Position numbers and translations under genes: made by a program | Assembly (NCBI RefSeq): GCF_035594765.1 | Contig: NC_085845.1 | Coordinates: forward strand, 155,698,897-155,762,896 | Origin: Anolis carolinensis | Lineage: Eukaryota | Length of the DNA: 64,000 nt | Direction: 5' to 3' | The notes under the pieces: model-generated | Database searches by the model: none | What the model was told of the DNA's origin: nothing | Seen by the model: the letters and a program-made list of their open reading frames with translations, nothing else | Part shown: positions 19,401 to 62,737 of the stretch, piece after piece | Layout of the letters: each line of letters opens with the position of its first letter | How positions within the stretch are numbered: position 1 is the first letter of the stretch

Positions 19401-22400
19401 ATAGAATACAGTATTAGTTGGGCCTATTTTTAATAATAACTCAAAAACAATGAGAAAGTTGATTTCTTCAATATCTTCCAATCCCTATGGATGCTGGTTA
19501 ACTGAGAGTCTACTATATTTGGATTAAACGGGAGAAGGGGAGACTTCTTGTTATGATTGAGCCTCATGGCTCTGTTACTGACAGACGTGGGCGTAAGACT
19601 CCTCGAGAGTCAGATACTCTCGAGGAGCGAGAAAGAAAAAGACTGCGAGACATTTTTGCAGCACCATCTGACGAAGAGTCTTTTGAGGGGTTTACGGAGA
19701 GAATGGAGGAGGGGCTGGTTAGCTCGGAGGAGGATGAGATGGATTGGACTCGGGTAAGGGAGGAATTGGGTGCCACTGGTCATGATGGGATAGAAGATGA
19801 ATGGGGACCTTCAGGATTAGACCCATGGCTTAGCTGGAGGGATGGGACGGGATCCACAGCTGGAGATGCTGTGGGGCGTAGTCAGAGGTGTTCCAGCTCT
19901 GATGAGGAAAGTGATGAGGAAACGCCCGGGTTAAGGAGGACAGCTGACAGTGATGAGGATTTGTAACTGGCATAAAATGGGGCTTGGGAGCAATTGCAAA
20001 TTGCGTTGGGCAAGGTAATCTGGACGAACGCTTGGGATCTGTGTGGGACGCTTTCCTGAAGACTGGTGTGTTTTCCTGTGCTGAGACGTAAGTTGTTTTG
20101 GAATTCAGGGTCAGACGGCGGGAGGAATTGTGTGGGCATTTGTTTGTGCAAACCTGTGCTTACTCTTATTAGCTTGACCTTCCGTCGTCTTCTTGACGAA
20201 CGCCATCTCCTGTTTTGAAAACTCGGACTGAACTGACCACGGCTTGTCTTCCCCCCTTCTTGGACTTGGAATCTACAAACGTCTGCTTCTGGCTTTGAAC
20301 TACGGAAAGGAACTGGGTCTACTCTACTGCTACAATCCTTGGCTGATCTGTTCGTGTTGGAAATCCTGTCTGCTGTGTGTGTGGGAGCGACGCAAGTTAC
20401 TCTAAGCACAGTGTTGGCAGCAGAGAGGAATCTGCTGCCAATTAGTTGCATTCTTTTGTATCTTTTGTTCCTCGGCTTTTGTTTTGTTTATCCCCAGGCT
20501 GAAGCAAGCAGTTTGTTTTTACCCGGATTAAACTCCGGTTTAATCCGGTTTATCTTTTGAACGTTTTTCCTTGCCCCTTTTTGCTCCTAAAGGCTAATAC
20601 TGCCTGGCCCTTGTATTTTACGGGCATTTTTGAGTTCTGTAATCCAATAAACTCTGTTATCTTGAACCTTGTGGCGTTCTGTCCTTGACACTTCTTAAGG
20701 AAAGATACTGGACTACTCTGTCTAATATTTGGAAACTATCCTCAAAATTTTGTTGTTTATTTGTTCAGTCGCTTCTGGCTCTTTGTAACCTCATGGATCA
20801 GCCCACACCAGAGCTCCCTGTCGGCCATTGCCACCCCCAGCTCCTTTAAGGACAAGCCAGTCACTTCAAGGATACCATCCATCCATCTTGTCCTTGGTTG
20901 GCCCCTCTTCCTTTTTCCTTCCATTTTCCCCAGCATCATTATCTTCTCCAAGATTTCCTGTCTTCTCATTATGTGGCCAAAGTATTTCATCTTTGCCTCT
21001 AATATCCTTCCCTCCAGTGAGCAGTCGGGCATTATTTCCTGGAGTATGGACTGGTTTGATGTTCTTCCTCCAATAGTTCATTATTTTTAATAGTTACTAA
21101 ATTCAACCAAAACCTATATATATACCATTGCTCAGGAATTAAACTTTACACTTACAATGACACTACTGGGAAAAGTTTGTTCCATCAATTTCAATAAGCC
21201 TATTAATGACAAAACCTGGAACTAATGCAATGTCTAATAGATAAGATTTGAAAGAATGATCTGGTTAGGTCATGCTGGAAAATAAAATTGCAATTTTAGA
21301 GCAATAATCTGAAAGATTGTCTTAAGTATCTGTATATGCACCTGATCCTCCCCTCATCCCAGTTCTCTGCACAGAAGGGCAGCCCCTTATATCTCTTATT
21401 CTTGGAAATTTTTAACATCAGAAAACCAAATGCAAAAATATTAGGTAAAAACCAGTATTTCTGAATCAAGAAGCTCTGTTTGTATTAATGCAAGAAAAAA
21501 CAAGGAACATTTCCCAAGATAATGGATGCTATCTACATTCTTTCAGGGATTCTATATATATGTATACACAATAAATTAATTACTCCAACACACTCTTTTA
21601 ATAAATAGGCAGAGCAATCCTAGTTGCTATGCCCAACCTTCCCAACACCCAGACAGGTTCTGGGGCAGGGCAGCATTGGGCAACCTTCTTGTTTTTTCTT
21701 TATTGCATTGCTTGCAATAGGGGGCATTTAGATCAAACATAGGACAAGTTTAAACAATTTCCTATATTTAGAAATAATTTAAATCAGCTCTAGGGAAAGT
21801 GCAATGTTTTCTTACATTGCGATAAGGTCAGTGAACTCAATGACTTTGGATCCTCTTTCTTCTTCCCTGAAGAAGTGAAGGGCATGGATTTTCCCATGTT
21901 GACATGGAAACTGAAATGCAATCTCTTTATAGAGTTAAATGCAAAGCTCTGATAATCCGGACTGCGTCTCAAGCATCAAATTTCTGTGTGTTTTCCAACT
22001 TAGGGGTTACAGGGTTGTACAGTGGGCCTTTGATATCTTCTACGGATTGATTCTAGGAACCCCTGTCGATACCAAAATCCATAACTGCTCAAGTCCGATT
22101 GTATACAATGGCATAGTAAACTGGTGTCTCTTATATAAAATAACGAAATCAATATTAAGTTTTTGGAATTTTGGGAGGGGGGATGGGATATCTTCAAGCC
22201 ATGGATGGTTGAGTCTGTAGACATAGAATCTGTGGGTATGGAGGGTCAACTATACTGTAAAAGCAAAACAAAACATCAAAACACTGTTCCTTTTAATATA
22301 TTTCATTGATTAATTTAATTTTGCAGCCCTCTTAGCTCTAACATTTATAACCTTTTCACTATTTTCTAAATGGTTTTGATGAATTTTGATTGTTTAAAAT

Positions 22401-25400
22401 CCTGAGCTAACTTAAAAACCAATTTAGCAATTTCTTAAAACCACTATTTGAAGAAGGCAAATGAAAATATAGCTGTTTTCCTTCACCAGAATCTCAGGCA
22501 AAGCTTTCCATGGTTGAACTAAGCATAGTGAAAAACCTCACAATATTTTATTGTCTTTGTTTTTTATTCTGAAAAAGTAAACTGAAAGCATAAAATCTGT
22601 AAACCATAAGCAAAGAATGCAATAGTGTCACCATTACAAACCATTTTCTGAAATTCTTTGATCACAGTGGTATTTGCAGTGCTACCCCGACCTCTAAAGG
22701 AATTCAAGCAATATATCCTACAAAAATTATTTCCGGCTTCCTTATCTAATTAGAAGAGATATGGGGCACTTCAGTTTTTGCTCTTATGAAGGGATGCACT
22801 GCCTTAAAAAACAAACAAACCTGGAAATCACAGTTTGAGTTCACTTCCAACCGCAATATCTGCCATTTGGTGGCATTGCAGGCATTTGTGTATGTGTTGA
22901 GGAGCAGGGAATGCACAGCTTTGGCATGCCAAAGAATAGGCATTGTGTGAACTGCATATGGCCTATAGAGCAAATTTCTCCCACCTGCCATTCATAATAT
23001 ACTATAGTATTTGGTCAAATCTAATATCCAGTTACATACTCAGTTATTCTACTTCTTATTATCATTTGCTTCAAATACTTTCACATTAAGAATGGTAATA
23101 AACTGATCTCAAAAGGAAAAAAAAATACCATCTGATTCTGAAGCTGCTCGGATGATCAAATAACTGCTAGGCAATGGTTGTGTTATAGAGCCAACAGCTT
23201 CCCCTTTAGGACCCTGAAAGTAAAAACAAGAGTTTTACGTTGATTTTAATGCACTGATCTTCAAAGGTTTTATTTTTAATTAATTTAAAGCAACCAGTGA
23301 TCCTGGTGACATTGAGAACTCTGATTGCTCATTTATGTCGATGAAGAAAGTAAAAAGGGATGTTATCAAGAAAAAATGGATGATAACAAGAAGCCACCTG
23401 GGAAGAAGCCACTAATGTTGCCTGTACTTTAGATCCATGTAGTAACTCAAGAAACTGGGAAACAGTTAAGCTGTAGCAGAATCAGAATAAACTAGTTTGG
23501 AGAGTTGGCTCAAGCCCCCTTTCCCAAGAATTTCTTGTACAGTACATATTTCCAGGTAAGTATGGGCATGCAGAGCGTGAGCCATAACAAAGTGCACAGT
23601 AGAAAAACCACAACGTATCTGTGTAGGGTTCAGTTATGCCTGATTCATAATATGTAACAGCAATCCTAAAACTAGAGTATGATACACAATTCACTACAGT
23701 GTCTACATTGAACAGTCCAATATGATGCAAAAAGTGATATTATCTTTTACATCAAATAAAATCAATATGACATAATATTACTGTTCTGACAAAGAGCAAG
23801 TATCTGCAATGACAGTTATAAAGATCAGCAGTACAAGTCCTGCATGCTGAACTTATGCTGAATTTTAAGACTGATCCTAATTCTTATAGACCAATATCCC
23901 TAAGCAATGTGGACTACAAAATATTTACTAAAATATTAGCAAAAAGACTGAGAGATATAATACCGGATATAATTAATGAAGATCAATACGGTTTTGTAAA
24001 AAACAGGAAATTAGCAGACCCTATAAGGAATATTTTGAACATTTTGAACCATGCCACAGAAAAAAAATCTAAAGTACTTATATTAAAATTGGACTTTTGC
24101 AAGGCATTCGACTCAATAGATCACAAATATTTGAACAGACTCTGCGAGGAATGTAATATGGGGGGGAAAGTGTGCAAGGTAATAAAAGAACTATATAGTG
24201 AAAACAAAGCAACTATCTTGGTAAATGGGACACAAACCAGACAAATAAATATTAATAGAGGAACTAAACAAGGATGCCCCCTTTCCCCGGCCCTATTTTC
24301 ATTAGCCATTGAACCTTTAGCAAACTTAGTAAGGAATAACCCGGTCATTAAAGGCTATAAGATGGGCAAGGAAGACATTAAGATTAATTTATATGCTGAT
24401 GATGTTATGATAATTTTAGGGGAGGTGGAGGAATCACTACAATCACTACAAGAAGATGAAATACCTAGGAGTGGATATACCAAAAAAACATCAACAATAT
24501 AATACAAATGAATTATAATCACCTATGGAAAAATATAAGCAAACAAATTATTACATGGGGAAAGAAATTCCGAGACATATCTACAAGGCTAAAAATCTAT
24601 AAGATGAAGATCTTGCCCAAATTTTTATTCTTGTTCCAAACCCTCCCGGTGAATATTCCTACCAATTTGTTGAAGAAGTGGGATAACTCTATGAAACAAT
24701 GGGTAGTGGGAGGAAACAAAAATAGAATTGCCAACTTTTTATACTATAGTAAACAAGAAATGGGTGGTTGGGGAGCTCCCTCGTTGGGAATATACTACGA
24801 GGCAAGCCAGTTAGCGAGGCTATTAGAATTCGAATTGGAAGGGTCAAAAAAATGGGTGCAAACAGAAAAGGAAGCAAATAATTGGCAAAGGGGAACATTA
24901 TTGGGAGAGAGAATTGATAGAAAAGACTTAAAGAATTTAAAAGCGGGCCCTTGTTTTTCAATGTTGTTAATCTGGAAAAAATGGCAAAATAAATTACAAA
25001 TAAATAAAATTGACCCTTTCCCACTAGAAACATTGGAAAATAAGGACAAGACATTCACAAATCTAATTAGGGCACTGAAGGAAAACGGTTTCAAAAGGAT
25101 TGGGGACATCATGAATCCCAAAGGAGAAATACTAAAGTGGGATAAAATAAAAGATAAATGTGGTCAAGGGAACTGGATAGCATGGTTAGGTCTGTCCAGT
25201 AAAGCCCAGGCCATGAAAAGAAGAGAAGTTGTCGAAACTCCACTGGATAGAATAATTAAAAGGAAAATAGAAATAGATAAAGGAATAACTGGGCTATTGT
25301 ATGATGTACTAATCACATTAACTTACAATACAAAAATAACCATTATAGATAATTGGAAACAGGAAAAAAACTTCACTGAGAAATTAATTGGGACTTGGAT

Positions 25401-28400
25401 TGACAATATTCCTAAAATTAAGCATATAAGGATTAAAGAAACACAAAGGAAAATAATATCTAAATGGTATAGAACCCCACTCCAAGTAGCACATATAACG
25501 GGAAATACTTCAAATAAGTGTTGGCATAACTGTGGGGAAATAGGTACATTTTCCCACATGTGGTGGGACTGTAGAAAAATTCAGAACTTCTATAGAAAAA
25601 TAAGAAAAATAATGGAAGAAATAATAGGGAAAGAATTAATATGGGACAAAGCTAGATACATGTCTCTCACAGTAAAGGTAAGGGAAGATAATAATAACTG
25701 GACAGAGATTCTAAAATATATGACAGCCGCAATACAAGCCACGATAGCCCGAGGATGGAGGGATGATACAAAATGGAATGTAGAAACCTGGTGGACTTAT
25801 ATATCAGAATATATAATTAACGATTTCATCATTCAAAAGAAAAAAATTTATACAAATAGCCTAAAAGATCAAGACTGGTTAAGGAAATGGACTGTTCTAA
25901 TCGACAAAATAGACGGAGACGAAAGATACCGTACCTTGAACCAGGCGTTCCACATGATTAAACTGATGTATTGACAATTTTGAATGGCTGTTCCAGGGGG
26001 GTGGGGGGTATGGGGGGAGGGTGGGGGTGGAGGGTGATACATTTCTAAGAACTGTTTGAAATGTCATTTAAGAAATAGTTACCTTTGGAACAATGTATAC
26101 TGAAATAAGTTATGTATGGCAAAAAGAGTTAATTGTTAGGATGTATCAAAAAGCAATAAAATAATTTTAAAAAAAAGAATTTTAAGACTGTAGACACAGT
26201 CTTCTCCAATCTGATGCTCTCAAGATAGGTTGTACAGTGAACCCTATCATCACCAGAAAAACATGGTGGAAATTAAGTCTGGCTAGGGACAACAGGATTG
26301 TAGCTGAAAACAAATATAGGACAACAGATTGGGAACAGATGGGTTAATGGAAATCAAAGCAAAAAAAAGGGGAGGTGGAGAAGAAGGAAGAATTCATAAC
26401 AGAGGCACGGATAAAAAACAACAACTGTAGAGTTTTTGAGTTTACTAACAGCATGAATTAAAAAAGTCAAATTTTTGGCTTTTGTGGGCCTCAGATTATT
26501 ATTGTTTTGGCACACTGTCGATATTATTTTATTTTGGTCATGTGCTTAGGCTGGCTTCATTTTTTTCCATGTATGGTAATTTTCCACTTCAGTTTTTTGC
26601 TTACTTATGAGGTATGCTTATTTTAAATCTGATTACTCTCACAGCCACTTTGTAGATGAAGACATATTAAATTAAAATAAAAGGGCTAAAAATAATGGCT
26701 GGGACCCTTCAACTTCACACAGAAATTATAATAATGACCTGATGATGCCATCTTTGTTCAGGCCATGCCCCAACAGAAAGAGTTCCAAGGTGTTGGAAAT
26801 AGCAACCTTCTACAAGCCTCCTATACAAGTTATTTGTTATGTATATAACTAAGATTGCTTACTATATTGTATGTATATATTGGTATACAATTTTCCCTTA
26901 ACACTATGTTGTTTGAAGTTGTGGGAGGGATTACAGACCATGTGACCAGACCTGAGACTGTTCAGAGTGAGACTCCATTATAGAATCCGTTTGAATCAGA
27001 AGTCAGTTAGAAGTCAGTTAAGTCAGTTGATGTCAGTTAGAAAATGAGTCAGTATGCATTAGCAGTAATCTGTGGCCTAGTAGATTAAAGCCTTGTGACT
27101 TGAAGGTTGGGTTGCTGACCTGAAGGCTGCCAGGTTCGAATCCCACCCGGGGAGAGCGTGGATGAGCTCCCTCTATCAGCTCCAGTTCCATGCGGGGACA
27201 TAAGAGAAGCCTCCCACAAGGATGGTAAAAACATCCAAACATCCGGGTGTCCCCTGGGCAACGTCCTTGCAGACGGCCAATTCTTTCACACCAGAAGCAA
27301 CTCAGGTTGCTCCTGACACGAAAAAAAGCAGTACAGTTGAGTATAGCATAGTAGTCTGTTTGCATCAGTTGATGTATGAAGTCAGTTGAGTATAGTTGAG
27401 TATAGTACAGTATGCTGCAGTGAGTAGTCAGTTTATATTAAGTTAATGTTCAGTAATGTATTAGACCAGGGGTCCCCAAACTTTTAAAGCAGAGGGCCTG
27501 TCCACAATCCTTCAGACTGTGGAGGGGCTGAATTATCATTTGAAAAAAAAAAAACCCAAACAAATTCCTATGCACACTGCACATGTCTTATTTATAGTGC
27601 AAAACAACAACAACAACAATGAAAGAACAATACAATATTTAAAAAGGAAAACAATTGTAACCAACATAAACCTATCAGGATTTCAATGGGAAGTGTGGGC
27701 CTGCTTTTGGCCAATTAATTAGGATTGTTGCCGTTGTGTGCCTTCAAGTCATTTCAGACTTCGGGAGACCCTAAGTCTAAAATTATTTATTTATTCATTT
27801 ACTACATTTATTTATTACATTTATATCCCGCCCTTTTCACCCCAAAGGGGACTCAGAGCAGCTGTATGTACATACAATATATTATACTATTAGCATAGCA
27901 CAATATTAGCATTATATATTACTATATTGAACTATACCACTATACTGTAATATCATATGTAATATATAACATATAATTAATATTATTATATGGTATTATT
28001 ATTAGCATTATATTGTATAACATTATAATATTATCAATATTATATGTATATACAATTATTATATTATTAAAAATGATATAAAATATATTATAAAACTGAG
28101 GGCGGGGGCCAGGTAAATGATCTTGGAGGGCCGCATCCGGCCCCTGGGCCTTAGTTTGGGGACCCCTGTATTAGACTGAAAGGAGTATCAGTTAATATGA
28201 AACCAATAAGCAATGTACCTATATGCTAAATATATTAAGTTTGTAAGTAAATCAACCTTGTTAACTTTTTGGTCTCTCGAGAGCACGATATGAAAGCAAT
28301 ATATTTTATGGGAGAGTAGATATTTTTTGGACATCTGAAATAACGCTTTTGAAGATCTGCTATATATTTTATGCATTAGTATATTTTTGTCGTAACCATT

Positions 28401-31400
28401 CAAAGAGAGAACCTGGGATATCAGTGTTATGATTGAGCCTCATGGCTCTGTTACTGACAGACGTGGGCGTAAGACTCCTCGAGAGTCAGATACTCTCGAG
28501 GAGCGAGAGAGAAAAAGACTGCGAGACATATTTGCAGCACCATCTGACGAGGAGTCTTTCGAAGGGTTTACGGAGAGAATGGAGGAGGGGCTGGTTAGCT
28601 CAGAGGAGGATGAGATGGATTGGACTCGGGTAAGGGAGGAAGTGGGTGCCACTGGCCATGATGGGACAGAAGATGAATGGGGACCTTCAGGATTAGACCC
28701 ATGGTTTAGCTGGAGGGATGGGACGGGATCCACAGCTGGAGATGCTGTTGGGCGTAGTCAGAGGTGTTCCAGCTCTGACGAGGAAAGTGATGAGGAAACG
28801 CCCGGGTTAAGGAGGACAGCTGACAGTGATGAAGATTTGTAACTGGCATAAAATGGGGCTTGAGAGCAATTGCAAATTGCGTTGGGCAAGGTAATCTGGG
28901 CAAACGCTTGGGATCCGTGTGTGTGTGGGACGCTTCCCTGAAGACTTGTGTGCTTTCCTGTGCTGTGACGTAAGTTGATTGGAATCCAGGGTCAGACGGC
29001 GGGAGGGATTGTGTGGGCATTTGTTTGTGCAAACCTGTGCTTACTCTTATTAGCTTGACCTTCCGTCGTCTTCTTGACGGACGCCATCTCCTGCTTTGAG
29101 AACTCGGACTGAACTGACCACGGCTTGTCTTCCCCCCTTCTTGGACTTGGAAAAACTACAAACGTCTGCTTCTGGCTTTGATCTACGGAACGGAACTGGT
29201 CTACTCAACTGCTACAATCCTTGGCTGATTTACTCGTGTTGGAGATCCTGTCTGCTGTGTGTGTGGGGGAGCGACGCAAGTTACTCTAAGCACAGTGTTG
29301 GCAGCAGAGAGGAATCTGCTGCCAATTAGTTGCATTCTTTGTATCTTTTGTTCCTTGGCTTTCGTTTCGTTTATACCCAGGCTGAAGCAAGCAGTTTGTT
29401 TTTACCCGGATTAAACTCCGGTTTAATCCGGTTTATCTTTTGAACATTTACTTTTGCCCCTTTTTGCTCCTAAAGGCAAAAACTGCCTGGCCCTTGTGTT
29501 TTACGGGCATTTTTGAGTTCTGTAATCTAATAAACTCTGTTACTTTGAATCTTGTGGCGTTCTGTCCTTGACAGATTGCCCAACGCCCATAAAAAGTTTA
29601 TTGCAGCAATAAACCCGTCAGGAAGACGATGGATGAGTTAAGGGCCAAAGTAGACCAATTGCAAACGGCTTTTACCGTTATCCAAACAGCTCAGGCTGTG
29701 AAAGGACATGTTTTGACTCCTGAACGCTTTGACGGAACCAGGTGCAAGTTGCCAACCTTTTTGGCACAAGTGGAGCTTTATTTTTCTCAGCTCAGTGCTC
29801 ATGCTTTTCCTACAGACACTAGCAAGGTGGCCTTTATTTTGAGTTTGTTGACCGGTCCCGCAGGACAATGGGCCACTAATTTAATTTTGGGAAATGACCC
29901 AGTCAAGGACAATTTGAATAATTTCAAAAAGTTGTTAACTGATACTTTTGGGGATCCTCTCCGCACGGAGAACGCTGGGTGGGCTCTGTATCGGTTGAAA
30001 CAGGGAAAGGGGACTGTTTTGGATTACTTAAATAAGTTTAACCTGTATCGCCACCAGCTGGATTGGGGGGAAAATGCATTCATGCTTTTATTTACTGCCG
30101 GGTTAAGTGATATGCTCCAGGATGAATTAGCACGCTTGGAGCCGGCTGAAAGCTGGGACGCCTTAGTAGCTAAGGTGCTGCGTTTAGACGCAAGGTTCGA
30201 GGCTCGTAAACACTCAAAAGCAATGTGTGCGCCACCCATGCATGTAACCAGGGCACCTGTGGTGATGGGGGAAGAGCCCATGGAGCTTGGGGTCTTTAAA
30301 AAGCTGTCTACAGAGGAAAAGAGCCGTAGGAGGCAGCTGGGCTTGTGTTTGTACTGTGGGAATGCTGGGCATTTTGCCAAAAATTGTAATGTGAAACCTT
30401 CCCAGCTTTCGGGAAAAGGCCAGCCCTAGTGCGACGTGAGTCCAACGCACTAGGGCTCCTCAAGCAGTCAACTGAGGGGAGGAAGCATGTTTTCGTACCC
30501 ATTACATTATCTGTTGGGGGAAGGGAACTTGTTTCTACTTTGGCACTGCTGGACTCAGGGGCTACGGTCTCCTATGTAGATATTGAGTTTGCTAAGAAGC
30601 ATGGCATTCCTAGAGTACGCAAGGCATGCGACGTGTGGGTGGAAGGAGCAGATGGGAGACTGCTGGAGACTGGGGTGGTTAACCATGAAACCTCAGCAGT
30701 AACGTGGGAGGTGCAGGGAGTAACGGGAACGTTTGTGTGGGATATTACGAGCTTGCCTAGATATGATGTGATCCTGGGGATGGATTGGCTAGCTGTAGTA
30801 AACCCACATGTAGATTGGGCAACACGTAAAGTGATCTTAAAGAGGCAGGATTGTTGCACTCTAAATGTTACTCATTCTGATATGGAGGGAGTGCCTGCTG
30901 AGTATGGGGAGTTCTCTGATGTATTTTGTAAAAGAGAAGCGGACAAATTACCACCGCACAGGCCATATGATTGCGCCATCAAGTTGGCAGAAGGTGCGAA
31001 ACTGCCAGCAGGGAGGCTGTATGCCTTGACTGTACCGGAAAGGCAAGCTTTGCGGGAGTTTCTAGATGAAAATTTAGCCAAGGGGTTTATTCGCCCATCT
31101 AGTTCTCCAACTGCGGCACCGGTATTCTTTGTAGCCAAAAAGACTGGGGAACTTAGGTTGGTCTGCGATTATCGGATCCTAAACAAATACACCATTCGGA
31201 ATAGGTACCCGCTGCCTTTAATCTCGGAACTGTTATCAAGGGTGCAAGGGGCTAAGGTCTTTACCAAGCTTGACCTGCGGGGGGCCTATAACTTAATCCG
31301 TATACGGGAAGGGGATGAATGGAAGACGGCATTTAACACGTGTTTCGGATGCCACGAGTTCCGAGTCATGCCTTTTGGGCTTTGTAATGCTCCTGCGGTA

Positions 31401-34400
31401 TTCCAGAGGTTCATGAACGATGTGTTCAGGGACCTAATTGACCAATTTTTAGTGATTTATTTGGATGATATCTTGATTTTTTCTAAGGACGAGAAAGAAC
31501 ATCGTCAACATGTCAAGCAGGTTCTGCACCGACTGCGGGCTAATGGGCTTTTCGCCAAGGCTTCCAAGTGCGTCTTTCATGTGCCTGAAGTGGAGTTCCT
31601 AGGTCATGTAGTGTCAGGTAGGGAACTTAAAATGGACCCACATAAGGTTGACGCCGTCAACTCATGGCAGGAGCTAAAGACTAAGAAGGATGTACAAAGG
31701 TTCTTGGGTTTCGCTAATTACTACCGGGAGTTTATTCCGAATTTTGCAAAGCTCACGGTACCTTTGACGCAGCTTCTGCGCAAGAAACAGCCATTTGTGT
31801 GGGGGCGGGAAGCTCACGAGGCGTTTCTACAACTAAAGTCTAGTTTTCAATCGGACAACATACTAACCCATCCTGATGTTGACAGACCGTTCGTGGTAGA
31901 AGCGGACGCTTCTAGCTACGCGTTGGGGGCTGTATTGTCTCAGAAGGATTCCTCAGGGACCTTGCGTCCCTGTGGATTTTACTCGCGGCAACTAACACCC
32001 TTCGAGCAGAACTATACCATATGGGAGAAGGAGTTGTTGGCGATTAAGGTGGCGTTTGAGGTGTGGCGGCACTGGCTTGAAGGGGCACGGCACCAGATCG
32101 TGGTCAGATCTGATCACAAGAACTTAGAGCACTTGCAAACAGCAAAGAAGTTAAACCAGCGTCAAATCCGCTGGGCTTTGTTTTTCTCCAGGTTTAACTT
32201 CAAGGTGCAGTTCGTGGAGGGGAAGGCAAACTTGCGGGCCGATGCTTTATCCCGCAAGCCGGAATTTAAGACCAATGAGCAGGTAGTATGTCAGACCATC
32301 TTGCCTACTGCCTCTCTGTGTGTTGTAGATAATGAGCTTGGGTTACATGACCAGATCCTTGAGGCTCAGAAGGATGATGTGTGGACTCAGGAGCAACTGA
32401 TGCTGCTCTCTGCAGGTAACCGTACCATACTGCCGCATCTCCAGGATCAAGACGGGGTATTGGTGCGTAGGGGGCAGGTTTACGTACCAGTAGGGACCCT
32501 CAGGTTGGAGGTGATTAGAGCCCACCATGACGAACCCATGGCTGGGCACTTTGGCAGGTTCAAGACCGTACAGCTTATCACCAGGAGCTACTGGTGGCCA
32601 AAGATGCGGCAAGACATTCTGCGCTTTTGTGACAGCTGCGCCGTTTGTCAGCAGAGTAAGACGCCTGTTGGGCGCCCTAGAGGGTTGTTATCGTCTTTAC
32701 CTGTTCCGGAGAGGCCATGGCAAATCATTTCCATGGATTTTATTTCAGATTTGCCTAAGTCTGGGGGTTATACTTGTATTTGGGTGGTGGTGGATTTATT
32801 TAGTAAACTGGCTCATTTTATTCCTTGTTCAACCATTCCGGCGGCCCCTACGTTGGCCTTACTATTTACAAAGCACATCTATCGTTTGCACGGAGCACCC
32901 GAGGTGATTATTTCAGATAGGGCTCCGCAATTTGTGTCACGCTTTTGGAAACACTTCCATGAGTGTTTGGGGACTAAGTTAAACGTGTCTTCAGCTTTCC
33001 ATCCGCAAACGGATGGACAGTCGGAACGGGTTAATGGGCTCTTAGAGCAGTATCTGCGTTGTTTTTGTTTAGATCAACCCACGGCTTGGGTAAAGTGGTT
33101 ACCGGTGGCGGAATTTGCTTACAACAATGCGGTGCACACGTCTAGTCAGCATACGCCATTTGAGCTAACTTATGGTTTTCACCCACGGGGAGGTGTGGCG
33201 CCGTCGACCAATGTGGTCTCTTCGGACCCTGTGTACCGCTCTTCGGAAATGGCTGCATTGCATGATGTTGCCCGTCGCTTACTGTTGGAAGCTAAGGCAA
33301 CGCAGAAGACTCAGGCTGACCGCCACAGGCAGGCAGGGGAGGAGTTGGAAGAAGGGGATTTGGTGTGGTTATCTTCCAAACATATTAAACAGGCTGGGGG
33401 AAAGTTTGCGCCTCGGTATTTGGGTCCCTTTCCTATCGTTAAAAAGATTTCTTCTGTTGCGTTTCGTTTGCGTTTACCGTCTAGTTTAAAGGTCCATCCA
33501 GTCTTTCATCGTTCGCTGTTGAAACTTGATACCTCTAGTCGTCGTGGTGCTATAGCGGAGGGTATCACTGCCACTTCTCCGCCATCGGGGGAGGAGGCCT
33601 TTGTGAGAGGGGATAGTGTTATGATTGAGCCTCATGGCTCTGTTACTGACAGACGTGGGCGTAAGACTCCTCGAGAGTCAGATACTCTCGAGGAGCGAGA
33701 GAGAAAAAGACTGCGAGACATATTTGCAGCACCATCTGACGAGGAGTCTTTCGAAGGGTTTACGGAGAGAATGGAGGAGGGGCTGGTTAGCTCAGAGGAG
33801 GATGAGATGGATTGGACTCGGGTAAGGGAGGAAGTGGGTGCCACTGGCCATGATGGGACAGAAGATGAATGGGGACCTTCAGGATTAGACCCATGGTTTA
33901 GCTGGAGGGATGGGACGGGATCCACAGCTGGAGATGCTGTTGGGCGTAGTCAGAGGTGTTCCAGCTCTGACGAGGAAAGTGATGAGGAAACGCCCGGGTT
34001 AAGGAGGACAGCTGACAGTGATGAAGATTTGTAACTGGCATAAAATGGGGCTTGAGAGCAATTGCAAATTGCGTTGGGCAAGGTAATCTGGGCAAACGCT
34101 TGGGATCCGTGTGTGTGTGGGACGCTTCCCTGAAGACTTGTGTGCTTTCCTGTGCTGTGACGTAAGTTGATTGGAATCCAGGGTCAGACGGCGGGAGGGA
34201 TTGTGTGGGCATTTGTTTGTGCAAACCTGTGCTTACTCTTATTAGCTTGACCTTCCGTCGTCTTCTTGACGGACGCCATCTCCTGCTTTGAGAACTCGGA
34301 CTGAACTGACCACGGCTTGTCTTCCCCCCTTCTTGGACTTGGAAAAACTACAAACGTCTGCTTCTGGCTTTGATCTACGGAACGGAACTGGTCTACTCAA

Positions 34401-37400
34401 CTGCTACAATCCTTGGCTGATTTACTCGTGTTGGAGATCCTGTCTGCTGTGTGTGTGGGGGAGCGACGCAAGTTACTCTAAGCACAGTGTTGGCAGCAGA
34501 GAGGAATCTGCTGCCAATTAGTTGCATTCTTTGTATCTTTTGTTCCTTGGCTTTCGTTTCGTTTATACCCAGGCTGAAGCAAGCAGTTTGTTTTTACCCG
34601 GATTAAACTCCGGTTTAATCCGGTTTATCTTTTGAACATTTACTTTTGCCCCTTTTTGCTCCTAAAGGCAAAAACTGCCTGGCCCTTGTGTTTTACGGGC
34701 ATTTTTGAGTTCTGTAATCTAATAAACTCTGTTACTTTGAATCTTGTGGCGTTCTGTCCTTGACAATCAGTCTGAGAAGCCTACACTGCCTTGCATGAAT
34801 ATTAGTGGATATTTACTACTAAGGAGAAGATTTACTCAAGTGAGTTTTTAACTCTTCTCAGGAAGATCATACTTAACAAATAGGTTGTGATTATTCTAAA
34901 TAGTGTGGATGCCAATTAATCTCCAAAAAGGGTCACACTTCCAAATGGCTTTGAAGTTGCTAGTTTTCCAAAGGGTTACGATCTCTAACAAGGTCATGCC
35001 TTTCCAAAACAAGATGCTGTAGATCATGTTATTTAAATTATTGTTTTTATGTGTATTGTGCAGTCTAGAGTTATTTTGTATCGCACCTCTTTACACCAAA
35101 GGTTTAAAATTTAGTACAAATTATCATTCAACATTCATCCTTGATAGACCATGCAAATTGGACATTTCATACATAAAGTGAAAAAATGTCCCATTCTGAT
35201 GCTAAAACATTGACAGTGGAAGTATTTTCACACTTGCTGAAACAAAGAGGTTGTGTTAACCAGTGCTTTAAATTCATGTCCAACAGCTTTCTCCTGCAAG
35301 TTTCATTTGTTTCAACAGACTTCCAGACCTCTGGATAAGAGGAAGATACAATGCACCCACACAAGATGAGATTTTCCTCTTTCAATGTCCCCAGCTATCC
35401 AAAGCAGTATTGTTCAGGATACTAGGATTTGAGAAAATAAAGTAAGCTTAACAGAGGTGTAGCTCTGCTGGACTAATCTATGCCAAATGAAAACATTCTG
35501 AGATCATTAATATTTAAATGTGCAGAAAGGTTTAGCATGTCATCAGGGCAATGTTCTATTCAGCATTAAGGGTACATATTCACTTACCTTAACAGCCCAG
35601 ATAGATTGCTCCAAAGGATGGAAAAGTTTGAAACAAAATCCATCCTTTTTTGAAGGCCGCTCAATGAGTTCACATGCGTTCAAAAGTACTGTTCCTACCC
35701 ACTGGCCATTTTTAGGAGTTTTGTAAATAAGCAGTACTCCTGGTTTCAGCACGCACCAAAGTTTTGTCCAGCTTTTCAATGTACCACGAATCTTAACAGG
35801 AAAAAAGAAGATTTTAGTTTGCACTGCAATTCCTCTCCTCCTGAGCAGAGACCTGCCCTGAAAGTATACATAACCAGTTCAGTATTATAAAATTAAATTA
35901 AGATAGTTCCAGGTTTCTTTCAACTATCCAAATGTCATGGAGTTATCCATAACCAGAATATGTATATTGCACATTGTATATTGTTATTTGATAGACTAGT
36001 AAACTACTAAAAGATATCAAATGTAACATGCAGGGATTTTTTAATGAAATAAAATCATGCACAGTAACCCTATAAATATCTATCTACTCAGAAGTACAGA
36101 TACTTCTAGCCAAGTATAGGATTCCATTCCAAACTAGTACTGTGTGTTACATATGTAAATGGAGATATAATGCTCTTAAAGAGTCAATTGACAGTTTGGG
36201 TGTGGGATTGCAATGTGAACTGAATTCAGGTTAGGCTGATTTCCAATCAGCAATGAGGTTCACTTGCAAGCCACAAGCAAATCACTCTCCAGGGTTGTTG
36301 TGAGAAGGGTACAACTGTAACCCATTGATTAACAATGTTGTACATTAACAAACTCTCAGATTTTAATCCATTTCAGAAAATACAGATTTTGAGGTAACAA
36401 TATCTCAGGCATAATATTTTATTGATCAGCCTAAGGTATTTAATTTGCATTTGACCTGTGATAATCACTAACATTAAGCAGTGCTGAATTACAGTATAAT
36501 TCCCATAACTACAGTCGATACGTTCGTGAATTTTTGGTGGAAATGTAAAACTGCAGATAATAGCAAATCCAGAAGAAGCATACTATAGAATTTAACTGGA
36601 GGGCCTAAAAGATGTGTAGAAATGATAAGTGAAATCACAGGAACCGGTCCCATGGATACAAAGGTTATACTGCATTTAACACCCATGTTTGTTTTACCGT
36701 GTCTTCTTGATGGAACAATTTATATAATTCTAATTTTCATAAATGAAACATTCAAATCTTTATGCCCTCATATATAAAAAGAGTGTATGTGTGTTTGTTT
36801 TCAAGAAATAATCTGTTCAAAATACAGTAGAGTCTCACTTATCCAACACTCGCTTATCCAACGTTCTGGATTATCCAATACATTTTTGTAGTCAATGTTT
36901 TCAATATAACATGATATTTTTGTGCTAATTTTGTAAATACAGTAATTACAACATAACATTACTGCGTATTGAACTACTTTTTCTGTCAAATTTGTTGTAT
37001 AACATGATGTTTTGGTGCTTAATTTGTAAAATCATAACATATTTTGATGTTTAATAGGCTTTTTTCTTAATCTCTCCTTATTATCCAACATATTCGCTTA
37101 TCCAACGTTCTGCTGGCCTGTTTATGTTGGATAAGTGAGACTCTACTGTAGTTGTATATCCATAACCTCCAATTTTCTAATATTAGAGGAACATCTTGTA
37201 ATTCGCAACATATTACCGTATTTTTGCTTTATAAGACGCACCTGATGATAAGACGCACCTAGTTTTCAGAGGAGGAAAATGGGGAAAAATAATTTGAACT
37301 AAAAGATGACCTAGAACATTTTAATAAAATAACATCTGAGGGGGGAGAAGGGCACCCACCAGCGGTCCTGCTGCCCGCCCGTCCCGCGCGGAGAGGGCGC

Positions 37401-40400
37401 CTAGCGAGGCCAGGCTCCATCCTGGGCGGGCAGAGCCACAAGAAGGTAGCCATCTTGCCTCCTCCTGCAGAAGGAGCCTCCACAGGGGCGCCGCTTTCGG
37501 GGGTCTGCGGCCATGGTGTCGCTTGTTGTGTTACAAGGAGGCGCAAGGGCGAGCCGCTTCACCTGCTGCCAGCGCTGGGGACGTGCCGGGCATGCCTCCC
37601 CACTCCTTCCTTCCCTCCCTCTTTTCCTCCCTCTTTCCTTCCCCACAGGTGCCTCAGGCACGGAAAGGCCTCCAGGAAGGGCCCAGCCTCCTCCTCCAGC
37701 CTTCGAGGGGGCCAGTCTGTCTCCACATGCACACGCACACACGGAAGTGCCTTTTGACTCTATAAGGGAAGAGGCAGCGCGTTAGTAGGGTGCTTTCTCC
37801 TTCTCTCTCTGAGATGAGGGTTACGTGGGGACACTGTCTGCAGGGGGAGGGGGAAGAGCAGCAGCCCACGCCTCACGTCGCGCGCGTGACGGAGCCCATT
37901 CAGAGCGAGCGATAAGGGAAAGCAGGAGGGGGAGGGGGAGGAGGAAGAGGGAGGGGGCTCGAGACCGCTTGACGGCGAGATATGAGGGAGGAACTGGCTC
38001 TCCCCGCGTTGTTTGGAATGTTTCGGGGAGGGGGGGGACACACTCTACACTGCTCTCTAATGCAGTTTCAAACTGCATTGTATGGTGAATGTAGATATTG
38101 CGTTTATAAGACGCACTGACTTTCCCCTCTATTTTGGGGGGGGAAAAGTGCGTCTTATAAAGCGAAAAATACGGTAAATACGAAGGAATCATCAACCCAA
38201 TTAGTTACTGCAGACAGATGTAGCCATGGCAATAGCAAGAAAGCAGTAACGAGGTATTCCCCTTGGCTCCTTTTCCAGCAAAGACTGAGCCTTTGGGATA
38301 CAATTAATAAATTCCCTGCTATAGGTAAACATCAGAAGTTAAGCAAGATTCTACTATTTAATATTTTAGTAGATGAACAATTACAACTTTCACTAATATT
38401 ACATACGGTTTCTGACCTTTAGCCAGTCAGCCATAACAATGACTGATGGATCAGTGATTGTACTAAGTAATTCTTTTGTAGCTCTTTTCTTCTCTTCTCT
38501 GTAATTTTTCTTTTGAACCTATAACAAACACAAAATAAATAAAAGAGTAAGAATCATAATTAAGGGAAAGAAAGTTATAAATTGACTAGACTTGCAAAAA
38601 CCAAAGGTCAAAACATAAAAAGAACTGTAAAAGGACTAATTCATTTGAAAAAACAACAAATCCCACTGTTAGTGGCACTGTTTATCTAATAGAAGAATTA
38701 TCATTCTATAATACTTATTTCTAACTAGTTTCCTATAGAAGTCTTTATATGACGGTTCTTCAACTATGTAAGCTTACATCAGGAACCCCTTTTTGTAGTG
38801 GTATTTTGCCCCCTTAGAAACTCATTTAGTGCTGATGTTGGCCTCATCACAAAGTTCAAATCTAGATTTTCACCAAACCTTTTGAGAGATATAAATCATA
38901 GTCTAGAAAAATGAGATTTTACAGACGGTATAAACTGTTCTAAACTGCTGCTTTTTGGACCATATCCAAAACCTAAGATTTTAATATATATAAATATTTT
39001 CATAAACAAACTAACATCTGTTGCCAAGAACTGACTGAGCAGGTTTCCATGCCTGAGCAGGAATTCAAATCCTGGCCTCCCCAACCCTTGAAACTTTACA
39101 TCAAACTTGTTCTCATTACCTCATTACCTTATATTAATTATTTATATTTTCAATTTACAATTCATAGTTCCTAGTCACTTTTCAATCCCTTTTCAAATTG
39201 GCTTTCATAATCTTACAAAATAATTCAGCAGCTTGGCTTAGAAAATACTTCTAAGTAAAGAAAACAGCTTCTGTAATTCCAAGATGAAAGAATAGTAAAG
39301 GTAAAGGTTTTCCCCTGACATTAAGTCCAGTCGTGTCTGACTCTGGGGGTTGGTGCTCATCTCCATTTCTAAGCCAAAGAGCCGGCGTTGTCCGTAGACA
39401 CCTCCAAGGTCATGTGGCCGGCATGCCTGCATGGAGCGCCGTTACCTTTCCGCCTGAGCGGTACCTATTGATCTACTCACATTGGCATGTTTTCGAACTG
39501 CTAGGTTGGCAGGAGCAGGAGCTAACAGCAGGCGCTCAAGCCGCTCCTGGGATTTCAACCTGGGACTTTTCGGTCTGCAGGTTCAGCAGCTCAGCGCTTT
39601 AACACACTTTGCCACCGGGGCTCCAGAAAGAATACCAGACTTCAAGTGAATCTAGCATCAATTTCTATAGATGTGACCCATCTTTGCTAGCATAAAGTGG
39701 TAATGACTAGCAACATATTTATTATTTTCCCAAAAACATATGACGTGCAGCAGGTTGGCAATAACTGGTCCACTTTGTCTATACATAATTATCACTGAGG
39801 TGACAAAGTCATGTGCAGGCTATGTTATACCATTTGGATGGAAACTGGAGACTGCTGTGATTAAATGGGCTTGTTTAAAAGCTGGTAATATACTCGATGA
39901 ATTTTACCAGTAGAGGTTATGTTGGTGGGGCTGTTAGGAGTCCAACATCATTTTGAAGGCTACAGCTTATTTATTTAACTACGTCCTTAAGATGTATCTA
40001 GAGATACATCAAGTCTCATAGAATATTTTCTAAAGATGATGACATTGATTCAGCACTGCAACTCTTCCAATATCCTAGTGTTTTTCTAAAGCTCTTCAAT
40101 ATTTCCTGTTTAGCTTCTGCCAGTTGAGTGATGCTACCTAGCCAGAATAATGGGGACAGTAAGTATGCTGTTTTGAAAAGCAACTGACCTTAAGAGACTC
40201 CTTCTTGGTGAGTTTGGTAGTTGAGGAGGTGGTGGTGGAGGCAGCAGCAATATCCTTCTCTGACCCATTATAAAGCTTAGATTCCGACTGAAAATATACA
40301 GTACACAAGAAAACAATGAGTAAAATGCTGCACTAGTTAACTTTTGAGTCAGTTAAACTTCAATTAAGTAAAAAAAGAAAGCCAAAAAGCTTTCCAGTCT

Positions 40401-62407: not shown

Positions 62408-62737
62408 AAAAGGTAAAGGTAAAGTTTTTATTCTGACATTAAGTCTAGTCATGTTCGACTCTGAGAGTTGATGCTCATCTCAATTTCTAAGCCAAAGAGC
62501 CAGCGTTGTCTATAGACACCTCCAAGGTCATGTGGCTGGCATGACTGCATGGAGCACTGTTACCTTCCCGCCAGTACCTATTGATCTACTCACATTTGCA
62601 TGTTTTCGAACTGCTAGTTTGGCAGAAGATGGGGCTAACAGCAGGAGCTTACCCCGCTCCCTGATTCGAACCACCGACCTTTCAGTCAGCAAGTTCAGCA
62701 GCTCAGCGGTTTAACCCACTGCGCCACCGCGGGCTCC
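62408..62737 (-). mobile_element. Sauria SINE
   Basis: Same family as 39297-39625. Confidence 0.88.

What the first reader, a model, noticed from the sequence alone, without database searches (positions are those of the whole stretch)
33530..34034. Gypsy integrase with an LTR-encoded acidic tail that mimics a LEDGF/p75 IBD-binding (TND-interacting) motif in place of a chromodomain
Seen: after the integrase [14 protein letters not shown] module, where sushi-type chromoviruses carry a chromodomain, pol has none. It reads through the PPT and about 139 codons into U3 of the 3' LTR. The tail is acidic and Ser-rich and contains [17 protein letters not shown] (33711-33761). Established: LEDGF/PSIP1 and HRP-2 IBDs, and related TFIIS N-terminal domains, bind acidic (D/E)xExFxGF motifs in CDCA7L/JPO2, POGZ, MLL1, IWS1 and ASK, and CK2-type phosphorylation strengthens this. 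From memory, JPO2 reads VADIFNAPSDDEEFVGF, which matches this peptide including the upstream DIF helix. LEDGF reads H3K36me2/3 and tethers lentiviral integrase to gene bodies through a different IN surface. Inference: this retrotransposon may have swapped its own chromatin reader for a captured or convergent host motif that tethers the intasome to transcribed gene bodies. Both independent insertions here lie in introns of a gene, which fits but is only n=2. I am not aware of this being described for a vertebrate Gypsy element.
Basis: partly seen in the sequence, partly recalled or inferred. Interest (0 to 1): 0.92.

Follow-up and report, generated by a model that had tools for sequence, protein, structure and literature searches.

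The report
Lizard Gypsy integrase tail mimics LEDGF-binding motif
A young, intact Gypsy retrotransposon of the green anole has an integrase whose last 138 codons lie inside its own LTR, and this tail carries a conserved peptide that matches the motif host proteins use to dock onto the chromatin readers LEDGF and HRP2, so it may steer insertions the way HIV does but by mimicry; binding is untested.

Summary
The window (Anolis carolinensis) holds an intact Ty3/Gypsy element at 28425-34765, with LTRs 100% identical and a 5-bp target duplication. Its 1201-codon pol crosses the polypurine tract and runs 138 codons into the 3' LTR.

- **No chromodomain:** Pfam finds none after the integrase SH3 module.
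- **Motif match:** the tail peptide at 33711-33761 meets every sequence feature of a LEDGF/HRP2 IBD-binding motif. These are a predicted helix ending in LRDIF, an 8-residue acidic Ser linker with a CK2-type site, and ExFxGF. It aligns 12/20 with the JPO2 motif 1 chain of PDB 6EMO.
- **Selection:** five full-length copies and a solo LTR keep the tail frame without indels. Tail dN/dS is 0.09-0.29. The 34-codon motif window shows 7 synonymous and 0 nonsynonymous changes in one pair and 11 and 4 in another. All 23 distinct tails read keep F-x-G-F.
- **New here:** other squamate Gypsy lineages (Podarcis muralis and one unassigned contig) carry the same helix-linker-FxGF layout downstream of a retained chromodomain. 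No other chromovirus tail examined carries it.

The motif is therefore an add-on, and this family lost the chromodomain rather than simply swapping it. Binding, targeting and capture from CDCA7L are untested. The scan noted the same family elsewhere in this genome.

The parts
28420..28424 (.). Target-site duplication ATCAG, 5' copy
   Evidence: The same pentamer follows the 3' LTR at 34766-34770.
28425..29573 (+). 5' LTR (1149 bp, TG...CA). It holds the same 137-codon ORF from the ATG at 28429.
   Evidence: It is 100% identical to the 3' LTR.
29629..30429 (+). gag (266 aa)
   Evidence: Retrotrans_gag, Ty3_capsid and a zf-CCHC knuckle.
30429..34034 (+). pol ORF (1201 aa, PR-RT-RNaseH-IN-tail), in the -1 frame relative to gag
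33354..33524 (+). Integrase C-terminal SH3 (GPF ... [10 protein letters not shown]) module. It is the last recognisable domain.
   Evidence: PF24626 SH3_Tf2-1, pol residues 976-1032.
33531..33617 (+). Pre-LTR part of the tail (29 codons), possibly a decayed chromodomain remnant
   Evidence: MAFFT places it against the chromodomain strands of relatives, with the aromatic-cage positions replaced; no Chromo hit; dN/dS 0.40.
33587..33616 (+). Polypurine stretches (GGGGGAGGAGG and GAGAGGGGATAG) abutting the 3' LTR, read through by pol as ...[10 protein letters not shown]
   Evidence: The position next to the LTR start is shown; the PPT function is inferred.
33617..34765 (+). 3' LTR
33618..34034 (+). 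LTR-encoded part of the integrase tail (138 codons plus stop), acidic and Ser-rich
   Evidence: There are no indels in 5 full copies plus the solo LTR, and dN/dS is 0.09-0.29.
33687..33725 (+). Predicted short helix [14 protein letters not shown] (motif part 1, hydrophobic anchor L..IF)
   Evidence: this is the only confident stretch of the AF2 model (helix 112-124, block pLDDT 78). ERKRL and the final F are invariant in 23 tails.
33726..33749 (+). 8-residue acidic Ser linker AAPSDEES (motif part 2). S-D-E-E fits the CK2 S-x-x-E pattern.
   Evidence: The length equals that of the JPO2 M1 linker in 6emo_A.
33750..33761 (+). FEGF (motif part 3). Together with the preceding E-S it reads ExFxGF.
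   Evidence: Both F and the G are invariant. One copy has FKGF.
34766..34770 (.). Target-site duplication ATCAG, 3' copy
19549..20690 (+). Solo LTR of the same family (target duplication CTTCT at 19544-19548 and 20691-20695), with the tail ORF intact at 19553-19966
   Evidence: Against the 3' LTR it shows 10 synonymous and 3 nonsynonymous differences.

Best explanation
The stretch is the C-terminal tail of the integrase of a young Ty3/Gypsy (chromovirus-derived) retrotransposon of Anolis carolinensis. Its last 138 codons are encoded by the first 418 bases of the LTR. The tail is a disordered, acidic, Ser-rich extension kept by purifying selection.

Its best-conserved block is a short linear motif of the TND-interacting / IBD-binding type. 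That motif has an amphipathic helix ending in LRDIF, an 8-residue acidic Ser linker with a CK2-type site, and ExFxGF.

The most likely mechanism is as follows.
- After reverse transcription, the integrase in the intasome uses this host-like motif to dock onto the TFIIS-N-terminal-type domain (IBD) of the H3K36me2/3 readers LEDGF/PSIP1 or HRP2/HDGFL2.
- This would tether integration to transcribed chromatin, and CK2 phosphorylation may strengthen it.
- The same layout in Podarcis Gypsy lineages that keep a chromodomain indicates the motif was added to chromodomain-bearing integrases. The Anolis family later dispensed with a working chromodomain.

Shown: the anatomy, the selection, the fit to the motif definition, and the recurrence in relatives. 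Inferred: binding to LEDGF/HRP2, a role in target choice, and phosphoregulation.
For: **Anatomy**
- establish the ORF, the LTR bounds, the target duplication, and the lack of a Chromo hit.

**Motif definition and fit**
- The definition comes from PMC9987994: an obligate helix with F/V/L/I anchors, an acidic linker of 8-16 residues rich in D/E/G/S/T that is often CK2-phosphorylated, and FxGF, which is essential for LEDGF/HRP2.
- PMC7337902 gives the consensus S/E-x-F-x-G-F and shows that F-to-A changes abolish HRP2 binding.
- All of these features are present at 33687-33761.
- The alignment to JPO2 M1 in 6emo_A is 12/20, with the same spacing.
- AF2 places its only confident helix exactly on [14 protein letters not shown].

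**Selection**
- Solo LTR against 3' LTR: 10 synonymous, 3 nonsynonymous, dN/dS 0.085, p = 4e-5.
- Against a copy with pol dS of about 0.65, tail dN/dS is 0.18 and the 34-codon motif window is 0.06. Coding LTR has 0 gap positions, while non-coding LTR has 17 gap positions and 20% divergence.
- All pairs among 5 full copies give 0.12-0.29.
- 23 distinct tails, down to 60% identity, keep the motif.
- Common variants among genomic copies in the tail are 6 synonymous and 3 nonsynonymous, with no indel.

**Recurrence**
- The helix-linker-FxGF layout occurs in Podarcis P0227 and P0244 and in contig protein P0038 (WRGVF / WREMF / WKTVF, then 9 acidic Ser/Thr residues, then F-x-G-F).
- A DPF3a-like form occurs in the P0035 group.
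- It is absent from all other chromovirus tails among 309 proteins and 333,697 residues.
Against: - No binding test of any kind was possible. No lizard PSIP1/HDGFL2 sequence could be obtained without typing it from memory.
- The PDB match is weak on its own (E = 0.11). The Podarcis and P0038 peptides, and a profile of all of them, found no IBM chain.
- The search pattern was defined after seeing the hits.
- Other blocks of the tail are conserved as well or better (SSEEDxMxWTRVRE; [24 protein letters not shown]). Selection on the tail therefore need not be selection on this motif alone.
- The focal family and the Podarcis FxGF clade are not sisters in the tree. The AU test of a single clade is borderline (p = 0.047), so whether the motifs are homologous is unresolved.
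- The insertion contexts (3 of 6 in genes) give no support.
Confidence: 0.5

Rival explanations
1. The motif is a genuine TND-interacting motif, but its partner is another TND protein of the elongation machinery (TFIIS, IWS1, Elongin A, PPP1R10/PNUTS or MED26) rather than LEDGF/HRP2. It would couple the intasome to elongating RNA polymerase II.
For: The review read says the helix plus acidic linker is the general TND-binding unit and that TNDs differ in selectivity. The helix block ERERKRLRD[IL]F is as conserved as FEGF.
Against: The same review states that FxGF is optional for other TNDs but present in, and essential for, all known LEDGF/HRP2 partners. Here FxGF is invariant, and it recurs in the related lineages.
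Confidence: 0.12
2. The tail is selected for another job, and the FxGF resemblance is incidental. Candidate jobs are a CK2-phosphorylated acidic region that controls integrase stability, nuclear import (basic stretch RRGRKTPRE / ERERKRLR), particle assembly or direct histone binding.
For: The whole tail is under constraint, not only the motif, and two other blocks are equally conserved. Acidic Ser-rich LTR-side tails without FxGF occur in sister lineages such as P0207, P0211 and P0217. The PDB E-value is only 0.11.
Against: The full three-part layout has a chance rate of 1.5e-5 in shuffles of the tail. It recurs in at least three further diverged lineages with different sequences but the same spacing. 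The 34-codon motif window has one of the lowest dN/dS values in the tail (0.06).
Confidence: 0.2
3. The U3 ORF is, in addition or instead, a separate LTR-encoded accessory protein. This would be 137 aa from the ATG at LTR position 5, made from 5' LTRs, solo LTRs or read-through or spliced RNAs, as with U3-encoded genes of some retroviruses.
For: An ATG opens the frame in every LTR. The solo LTR keeps the ORF intact. Annotated gene models start at this ATG or include pieces of the ORF (P0010, P0305, P0306, P0308, P0309).
Against: U3 of a 5' or solo LTR lies upstream of the LTR's own transcription start. The ATG is part of the conserved LTR end (TGTTATGA), which is needed for integration anyway. 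The frame is continuous with pol in all five full-length copies. The gene models look like prediction artefacts, and no RNA evidence could be obtained.
Confidence: 0.05
4. On origin rather than function: the motif was captured from a host gene, namely the first coding exon of CDCA7L/JPO2 or, for the Podarcis form, DPF3, rather than evolving de novo.
For: The match to human JPO2 M1 is 12/20 with an identical linker length. The Podarcis form resembles the DPF3a peptide printed in PMC7337902. From memory only, the residues after the JPO2 motif (ME..L.SSEE) also resemble the tail; I did not test this.
Against: No host protein matched the tail in three database searches covering lengths 244-2100 aa or in the 1.84-billion representative search. 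Those searches would miss a 20-residue match. The focal peptide is about as similar to the Podarcis element motif (10/19 by eye) as to JPO2, which is what a shared binding constraint would produce.
Confidence: 0.13

Closest known systems
Cellular IBD-binding motifs (IBMs) / TND-interacting motifs of JPO2 (CDCA7L), DPF3a, MLL1, IWS1, POGZ, ASK and MED1
   Same: The three-part layout is the same: a short helix with a hydrophobic anchor, an 8-16 residue acidic Ser/Thr linker with CK2-type sites, and S/E-x-F-x-G-F in a disordered region. The match to JPO2 M1 is 12/20, with the same 8-residue linker.
   Different: The motif sits on a retrotransposon integrase and is encoded in an LTR. No binding data exist. 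Homology to any host motif is not shown.
Lentiviral integrase with LEDGF/p75
   Same: The proposed partner domain (the IBD) and the proposed outcome (tethering to H3K36me-marked transcribed chromatin) are the same.
   Different: By established knowledge, lentiviral integrase binds the IBD through the folded catalytic-core dimer interface, not through a linear FxGF motif. Here the contact would copy the cellular partners.
Gammaretroviral (MLV) integrase C-terminal tail peptide with the BET ET domain; Ty1 integrase targeting domain with AC40; Ty5 integrase targeting domain with Sir4
   Same: A short peptide in the disordered C-terminal tail of an integrase acts as the tether to a host chromatin or transcription factor (PMC4027182 and PMC7459421, listed).
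   Different: The host partner and the motif differ. In this element the tail is encoded by the LTR.
Chromoviruses (Ty3/Gypsy with a C-terminal chromodomain, such as sushi-type, Tf1 and MAGGY)
   Same: The integrase is 40-57% identical to chromodomain-bearing elements and nests inside a squamate chromovirus clade with 100% SH-aLRT support. The SH3/GPF module is shared.
   Different: There is no detectable chromodomain. At most a decayed remnant remains, lacking the aromatic-cage residues. The tail carries an FxGF motif instead.

Membership tests
LEDGF/HRP2 IBD-binding motif (TND-interacting motif with FxGF) | FxGF, with both phenylalanines essential | tested here: met
   FEGF lies at 33750-33761. 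F, G and F are invariant in 23 distinct tails.
LEDGF/HRP2 IBD-binding motif (TND-interacting motif with FxGF) | Acidic or phosphorylatable residue two positions before the first F (S/E-x-F-x-G-F) | tested here: met
   The sequence reads E-S-F-E-G-F in this copy and D-S-F-E-G-F in other subfamilies. The consensus is from PMC7337902.
LEDGF/HRP2 IBD-binding motif (TND-interacting motif with FxGF) | Flexible acidic linker of 8-16 residues rich in D/E/G/S/T | tested here: met
   The linker AAPSDEES is 8 residues, the same length as in JPO2 M1 of 6emo_A.
LEDGF/HRP2 IBD-binding motif (TND-interacting motif with FxGF) | Short upstream alpha-helix with F/V/L/I anchor residues | tested here: met
   AF2 without an alignment predicts a helix over [14 protein letters not shown]. 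It is the only block with pLDDT near 78. This is a prediction only.
LEDGF/HRP2 IBD-binding motif (TND-interacting motif with FxGF) | Lies in an intrinsically disordered region | tested here: met
   The 167-aa tail has no Pfam domain. pLDDT is under 50 for most of the model. The Atlas search gave no hit.
LEDGF/HRP2 IBD-binding motif (TND-interacting motif with FxGF) | CK2 phosphorylation of the linker that raises affinity | not testable with these tools
   S-D-E-E fits the S-x-x-E pattern at sequence level only.
LEDGF/HRP2 IBD-binding motif (TND-interacting motif with FxGF) | Direct binding to the IBD/TND | not tested
Ty3/Gypsy LTR retrotransposon | Identical LTRs with TG...CA ends, a target duplication, gag, and pol in the order PR-RT-RNaseH-IN | tested here: met
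Chromovirus | Chromodomain at the integrase C-terminus | tested here: not met
   No PF00385 hit was found at E up to 0.1. Of 148 nearest representatives, 97 have a chromodomain pattern.
Chromovirus | Phylogenetic placement among chromodomain-bearing elements | tested here: met
   In the RT-IN quick tree the family falls inside a squamate clade (100% SH-aLRT) with chromodomain-bearing Podarcis, Gekko and Anolis lineages.
Host-gene capture (CDCA7L/JPO2 exon) | Similarity to the host gene that extends beyond the short motif | tested here: inconclusive
   No host protein matched.

The most novel reading that the evidence does not exclude
A squamate-specific clade of chromoviruses evolved LTR-encoded integrase tails that copy the cellular IBD-binding motif, possibly more than once. 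This gives a retrotransposon access to the LEDGF/HRP2 hub that lentiviruses reach through a different surface. In the green anole one highly successful and still intact family then gave up its chromodomain and relies on the mimic motif alone.
Probability: 0.42. Interest if true: 0.85.

Novelty: new variant of a known kind. Interest (0 to 1): 0.74.

Why it matters
- **Tethering by mimicry:** integrase tethering decides where retroelements land. Known tethers are few (LEDGF for lentiviruses, BET for gammaretroviruses, Pol III factors and Sir4 for yeast Ty elements, chromodomains for chromoviruses). A vertebrate Gypsy element that uses a host-like FxGF motif would be the first retrotransposon example of motif mimicry aimed at the TND/IBD hub.
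- **Convergence on LEDGF/HRP2:** the retrotransposon and lentiviruses would reach the same hub by unrelated interfaces.
- **A natural comparison:** within one genome, the FxGF-only family could be compared with the chromodomain family to ask how the tether shapes insertion landscapes.
- **Coding capacity of U3:** about 92% of an inferred U3 would be under protein-coding constraint.
- **Testability:** the claim can be tested directly with peptides and existing genome data.

Tried and rejected
**Searches that found nothing useful**
- PDB search with the whole 167-aa tail found only a de novo protein. The JPO2 hit appeared only with the 38-aa piece.
- PDB searches with the P0038 and Podarcis peptides, and with a 5-sequence profile (A2), found no IBM chain.
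- The ESM Atlas feature search gave no usable hit.
- The primary papers on the motif (Tesina 2015, Sharma 2018, Cermakova 2021) are not held. I used a review and the DPF3a paper instead.

**Reads and expression**
- Only Logan contigs of runs of uncertain type were available. They show a very high copy number and the common variants, but cannot show expression, transcript ends or strand.

**Context and origin**
- An exact look-up of the window's gag protein, to get the host-gene annotation, found no record.
- The search for a host source of the tail in the 244-777 aa class returned only A. carolinensis element fragments and chimeric gene models.
- L001 (the contig of P0038) has several polypurine runs but only one LTR side. 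Whether its FxGF is LTR-encoded could not be decided.

**Phylogeny**
- A single origin of FxGF was tested by an AU test, which gave p = 0.047. That is borderline, so I claim neither one nor two origins.

**Not run**

**Rejected**
- Chance or a non-functional read-through is rejected by dN/dS and by the absence of indels.
Full report
**What is there**

The window comes from Anolis carolinensis. All close protein relatives carry that species name, and four further copies were fetched from assembly GCA_035594765.1.

At 28425-34765 lies a complete Ty3/Gypsy element.
- It has two 1149-bp LTRs (TGTTATGA...CCTTGACA) with no difference between them.
- It is flanked by a 5-bp duplication, ATCAG.
- gag is at 29629-30429, and a 1201-codon pol at 30429-34034 is in the -1 frame.
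- Pfam finds protease, RT, RNase H, the integrase zinc finger, the core and the Tf2-type SH3 module (pol residues 976-1032). It then finds nothing in the last 167 residues and no chromodomain.

The 3' LTR starts at 33617. pol therefore reads through the polypurine stretches at 33587-33616 and runs 138 codons into the LTR, stopping at 34032-34034.

A TATA-like GCATAAAATGG follows 7 nt after the stop. The only AATAAA is 45 nt before the LTR end. This makes about 92% of an inferred U3 coding. The U3/R boundary is an inference.

A solo LTR of the same family, with its own duplication CTTCT, lies at 19549-20690.

**The motif**

Two papers define a LEDGF/HRP2-type TND-interacting motif.
- The review PMC9987994 requires a short helix with F/V/L/I anchors, an acidic linker of 8-16 residues rich in D/E/G/S/T that CK2 often phosphorylates, and an FxGF. 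The FxGF is present in, and essential for, all known LEDGF and HRP2 partners.
- PMC7337902 gives the consensus S/E-x-F-x-G-F, prints the DPF3a peptide that binds the HRP2 IBD, and shows that F-to-A changes abolish binding.

The tail has all of these parts. [11 protein letters not shown] is followed by AAPSDEES (8 residues, with S-D-E-E fitting CK2) and then FEGF preceded by E-S.

A structure prediction without an alignment is poor overall (mean pLDDT 46). Its only confident stretch is a helix over [14 protein letters not shown] that ends at the phenylalanine eight residues before FEGF.

A PDB sequence search with the 38-residue piece returns chain 6emo_A, the LEDGF IBD fused to JPO2 motif 1. 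Twelve of 20 residues are identical and the spacing is the same.

In 200,000 shuffles of the tail, an FxGF arises in 1.3% and the full layout in 0.0015%.

**Is it selected?**

Yes.
- The solo LTR differs from the 3' LTR in the tail frame by 10 synonymous and 3 nonsynonymous changes (dN/dS 0.085, binomial p = 4e-5). Four of the synonymous changes lie inside the motif.
- A full-length copy of a diverged subfamily (L002, 85% nucleotide identity, pol dS about 0.65) gives these dN/dS values:

| Region | dN/dS |
|---|---|
| RT and IN | 0.026 |
| gag | 0.12 |
| LTR-encoded tail | 0.18 |
| 34 codons around the motif | 0.06 (11 synonymous, 4 nonsynonymous) |

- In the same comparison the coding 414 bases of the LTR have no gap and 12.6% divergence. 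The 731 non-coding bases have 17 gap positions and 20% divergence.
- All ten pairs among five full-length copies give 0.12-0.29, and every copy keeps exactly 167 tail codons.
- Contigs of three public runs show the common variants among the many genomic copies. There are 6 synonymous and 3 nonsynonymous in the tail and no indel, against 4 indels in the non-coding LTR.
- At the protein level, 23 distinct tails keep ERKRL..D[IL]F, D-E in the linker, and F-x-G-F. This includes one tail only 60% identical to this copy, and one copy has FKGF.
- Two other blocks of the tail are equally conserved, so the tail probably does more than one thing.

**Relatives**

The tail itself has no detectable homologue outside A. 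carolinensis.
- Searches covered proteins of 244-2100 residues and 1.84 billion representatives.
- The integrase has no relatives between 97% and about 52% identity.

The nearest integrases are chromoviruses. Of 148 representative tails, 97 show a chromodomain pattern right after the SH3 module.

Several squamate lineages that share the HPVFHR signature carry a motif of the same build downstream of a chromodomain.
- Podarcis muralis P0227 and P0244 have WRGVF or WREMF, then nine acidic Ser/Thr residues, then FRGF.
- An unassigned contig protein, P0038, has WKTVF, then nine residues, then FLGF.
- A Podarcis group (P0035, P0185, P0256, P0265, P0273, P0284, P0286) has DWLF, then TPTLSAST, then F-[QHR]-GF, then acidic Ser residues. 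This closely resembles the DPF3a peptide.

No other tail among 309 Gypsy proteins (333,697 residues) has the layout. The pattern was written after seeing the hits, which weakens that count.

In an RT-IN tree of 884 columns, all squamate lineages form one clade (100% SH-aLRT). The focal family groups there with chromodomain-bearing lineages that lack FxGF (Rhineura, Podarcis P0207, Gekko), and the Podarcis FxGF lineages form their own clade. Forcing all FxGF carriers together costs 14 log-likelihood units (AU p = 0.047). That is borderline, and long branches are involved. Either one old gain with losses or two gains is possible, and both speak for function.

An alignment with relatives suggests that the 29 pre-LTR tail codons are a decayed chromodomain remnant lacking the aromatic-cage residues. 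This is weak evidence. Sister lineages also show the junction peptide GD[SG]VM followed by acidic Ser-rich sequence. This suggests that reading into the LTR is a clade-wide habit. I did not verify that on DNA.

**Mechanism and rivals**

The best-supported reading is a host-like docking motif on the integrase tail that binds the IBD of LEDGF or HRP2 and so tethers the intasome to H3K36-methylated, transcribed chromatin.
- In kind this parallels the MLV tail with BET, and the Ty1 and Ty5 targeting peptides.
- In partner it parallels lentiviruses, but through the surface that cellular partners use.

Nothing here tests binding. I could not bring a lizard IBD sequence into the session without typing it from memory, so no complex was modelled.

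The rivals are as follows.
- The partner is another TND.
- The acidic tail has a different function and the resemblance to FxGF is incidental.
- The ATG at LTR position 5 opens a separate LTR-encoded protein.
- As a question of origin, the motif was captured from CDCA7L or DPF3.

Chance read-through is excluded by the selection data.

**The gene-body argument**

An exon that begins with ATG lies on the minus strand at 53454-53319 (an earlier scan note calls the gene ORP8/ORP5-like). Both insertions in the window are therefore probably intronic and antisense. Of the four other copies, one lies inside an EBF-type gene, also antisense, and three lie outside annotated genes. Three of six is uninformative.

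**Verdict**

The 'swap' should be restated: the motif was added in a squamate chromovirus clade, and the chromodomain was later lost in this family.

I found no paper describing such a motif in a retrotransposon integrase in the library searched. The scan itself noted the same family elsewhere in this genome.

I rate it a new variant of a known kind (integrase tethering by a tail peptide), with high but not top interest, because the key step, binding, is untested.

Noticed in passing
P0309, P0308, P0305, P0306, P0003 (A. carolinensis gene models): Pieces of the LTR ORF or of pol are built into annotated host gene models. Examples are Glucosidase II alpha H9GE36_ANOCA, which holds about 50 tail residues, and OGFRL1 isoform X4, which is the RT part. 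These are either exonised solo LTRs or annotation artefacts.
   Followed up: partly
P0010 (Ensembl model); window 28429-28842: The 137-codon ORF opens with an ATG at LTR position 5 in every LTR. One gene model starts there and joins the 5' LTR ORF to pol. This is probably a prediction artefact, but a separate U3 protein is not excluded.
   Followed up: partly
window 34035-34765: A TATA-like GCATAAAATGG lies 7 nt after the tail stop, and the single AATAAA is at 34721, 45 nt from the LTR end. This implies a U3 of about 455 nt that is nearly all coding, a very long R and a tiny U5. An earlier scan note makes the same point.
   Followed up: no
window 23855-25974 (+) and 63391-63843 (+): There is an RVT_1 ORF (215 aa) followed by a 488-aa ORF with no Pfam hit, and a second RT fragment. 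These are other retroelements, probably non-LTR.
   Followed up: partly
window 53319-53454 (-): A coding exon on the minus strand begins with ATG ([10 protein letters not shown]...) and ends at a GT donor. An earlier scan note calls it the first coding exon of an ORP8/ORP5-type gene.
   Followed up: partly
P0227 and P0244 (Podarcis muralis): These proteins have a second, upstream acidic motif of similar build but with M or L in place of the first F (YFGTTDEEQEMEGF and YFATTDEEEELEGF). The tails may therefore carry two docking motifs, as JPO2 does.
   Followed up: no
P0217/P0218 (Anolis family 2), P0207, P0211: The tails of sister lineages show the same PPT/LTR junction peptide GD[SG]V[MV], followed by acidic Ser-rich sequence without FxGF. 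P0217 has HDIVMPDEEENLGF, a possible degenerate relative of the motif.
   Followed up: no
L005:11247-17668: This otherwise 98%-identical copy is split by a nested insertion of about 6.4 kb at element position about 3520. The insert holds a distantly related RT.
   Followed up: no
window 33762-34031: Two further tail blocks are as conserved as the motif: SSEED.M.WTRVRE and [20 protein letters not shown], followed by an acidic Ser run. Their function is unknown. They could be further linear motifs, or they could overlap U3 regulatory DNA.
   Followed up: partly
window 39295-39454 and 62413-62572: A 160-nt direct repeat pair at 88% identity, unrelated to the element.
   Followed up: no
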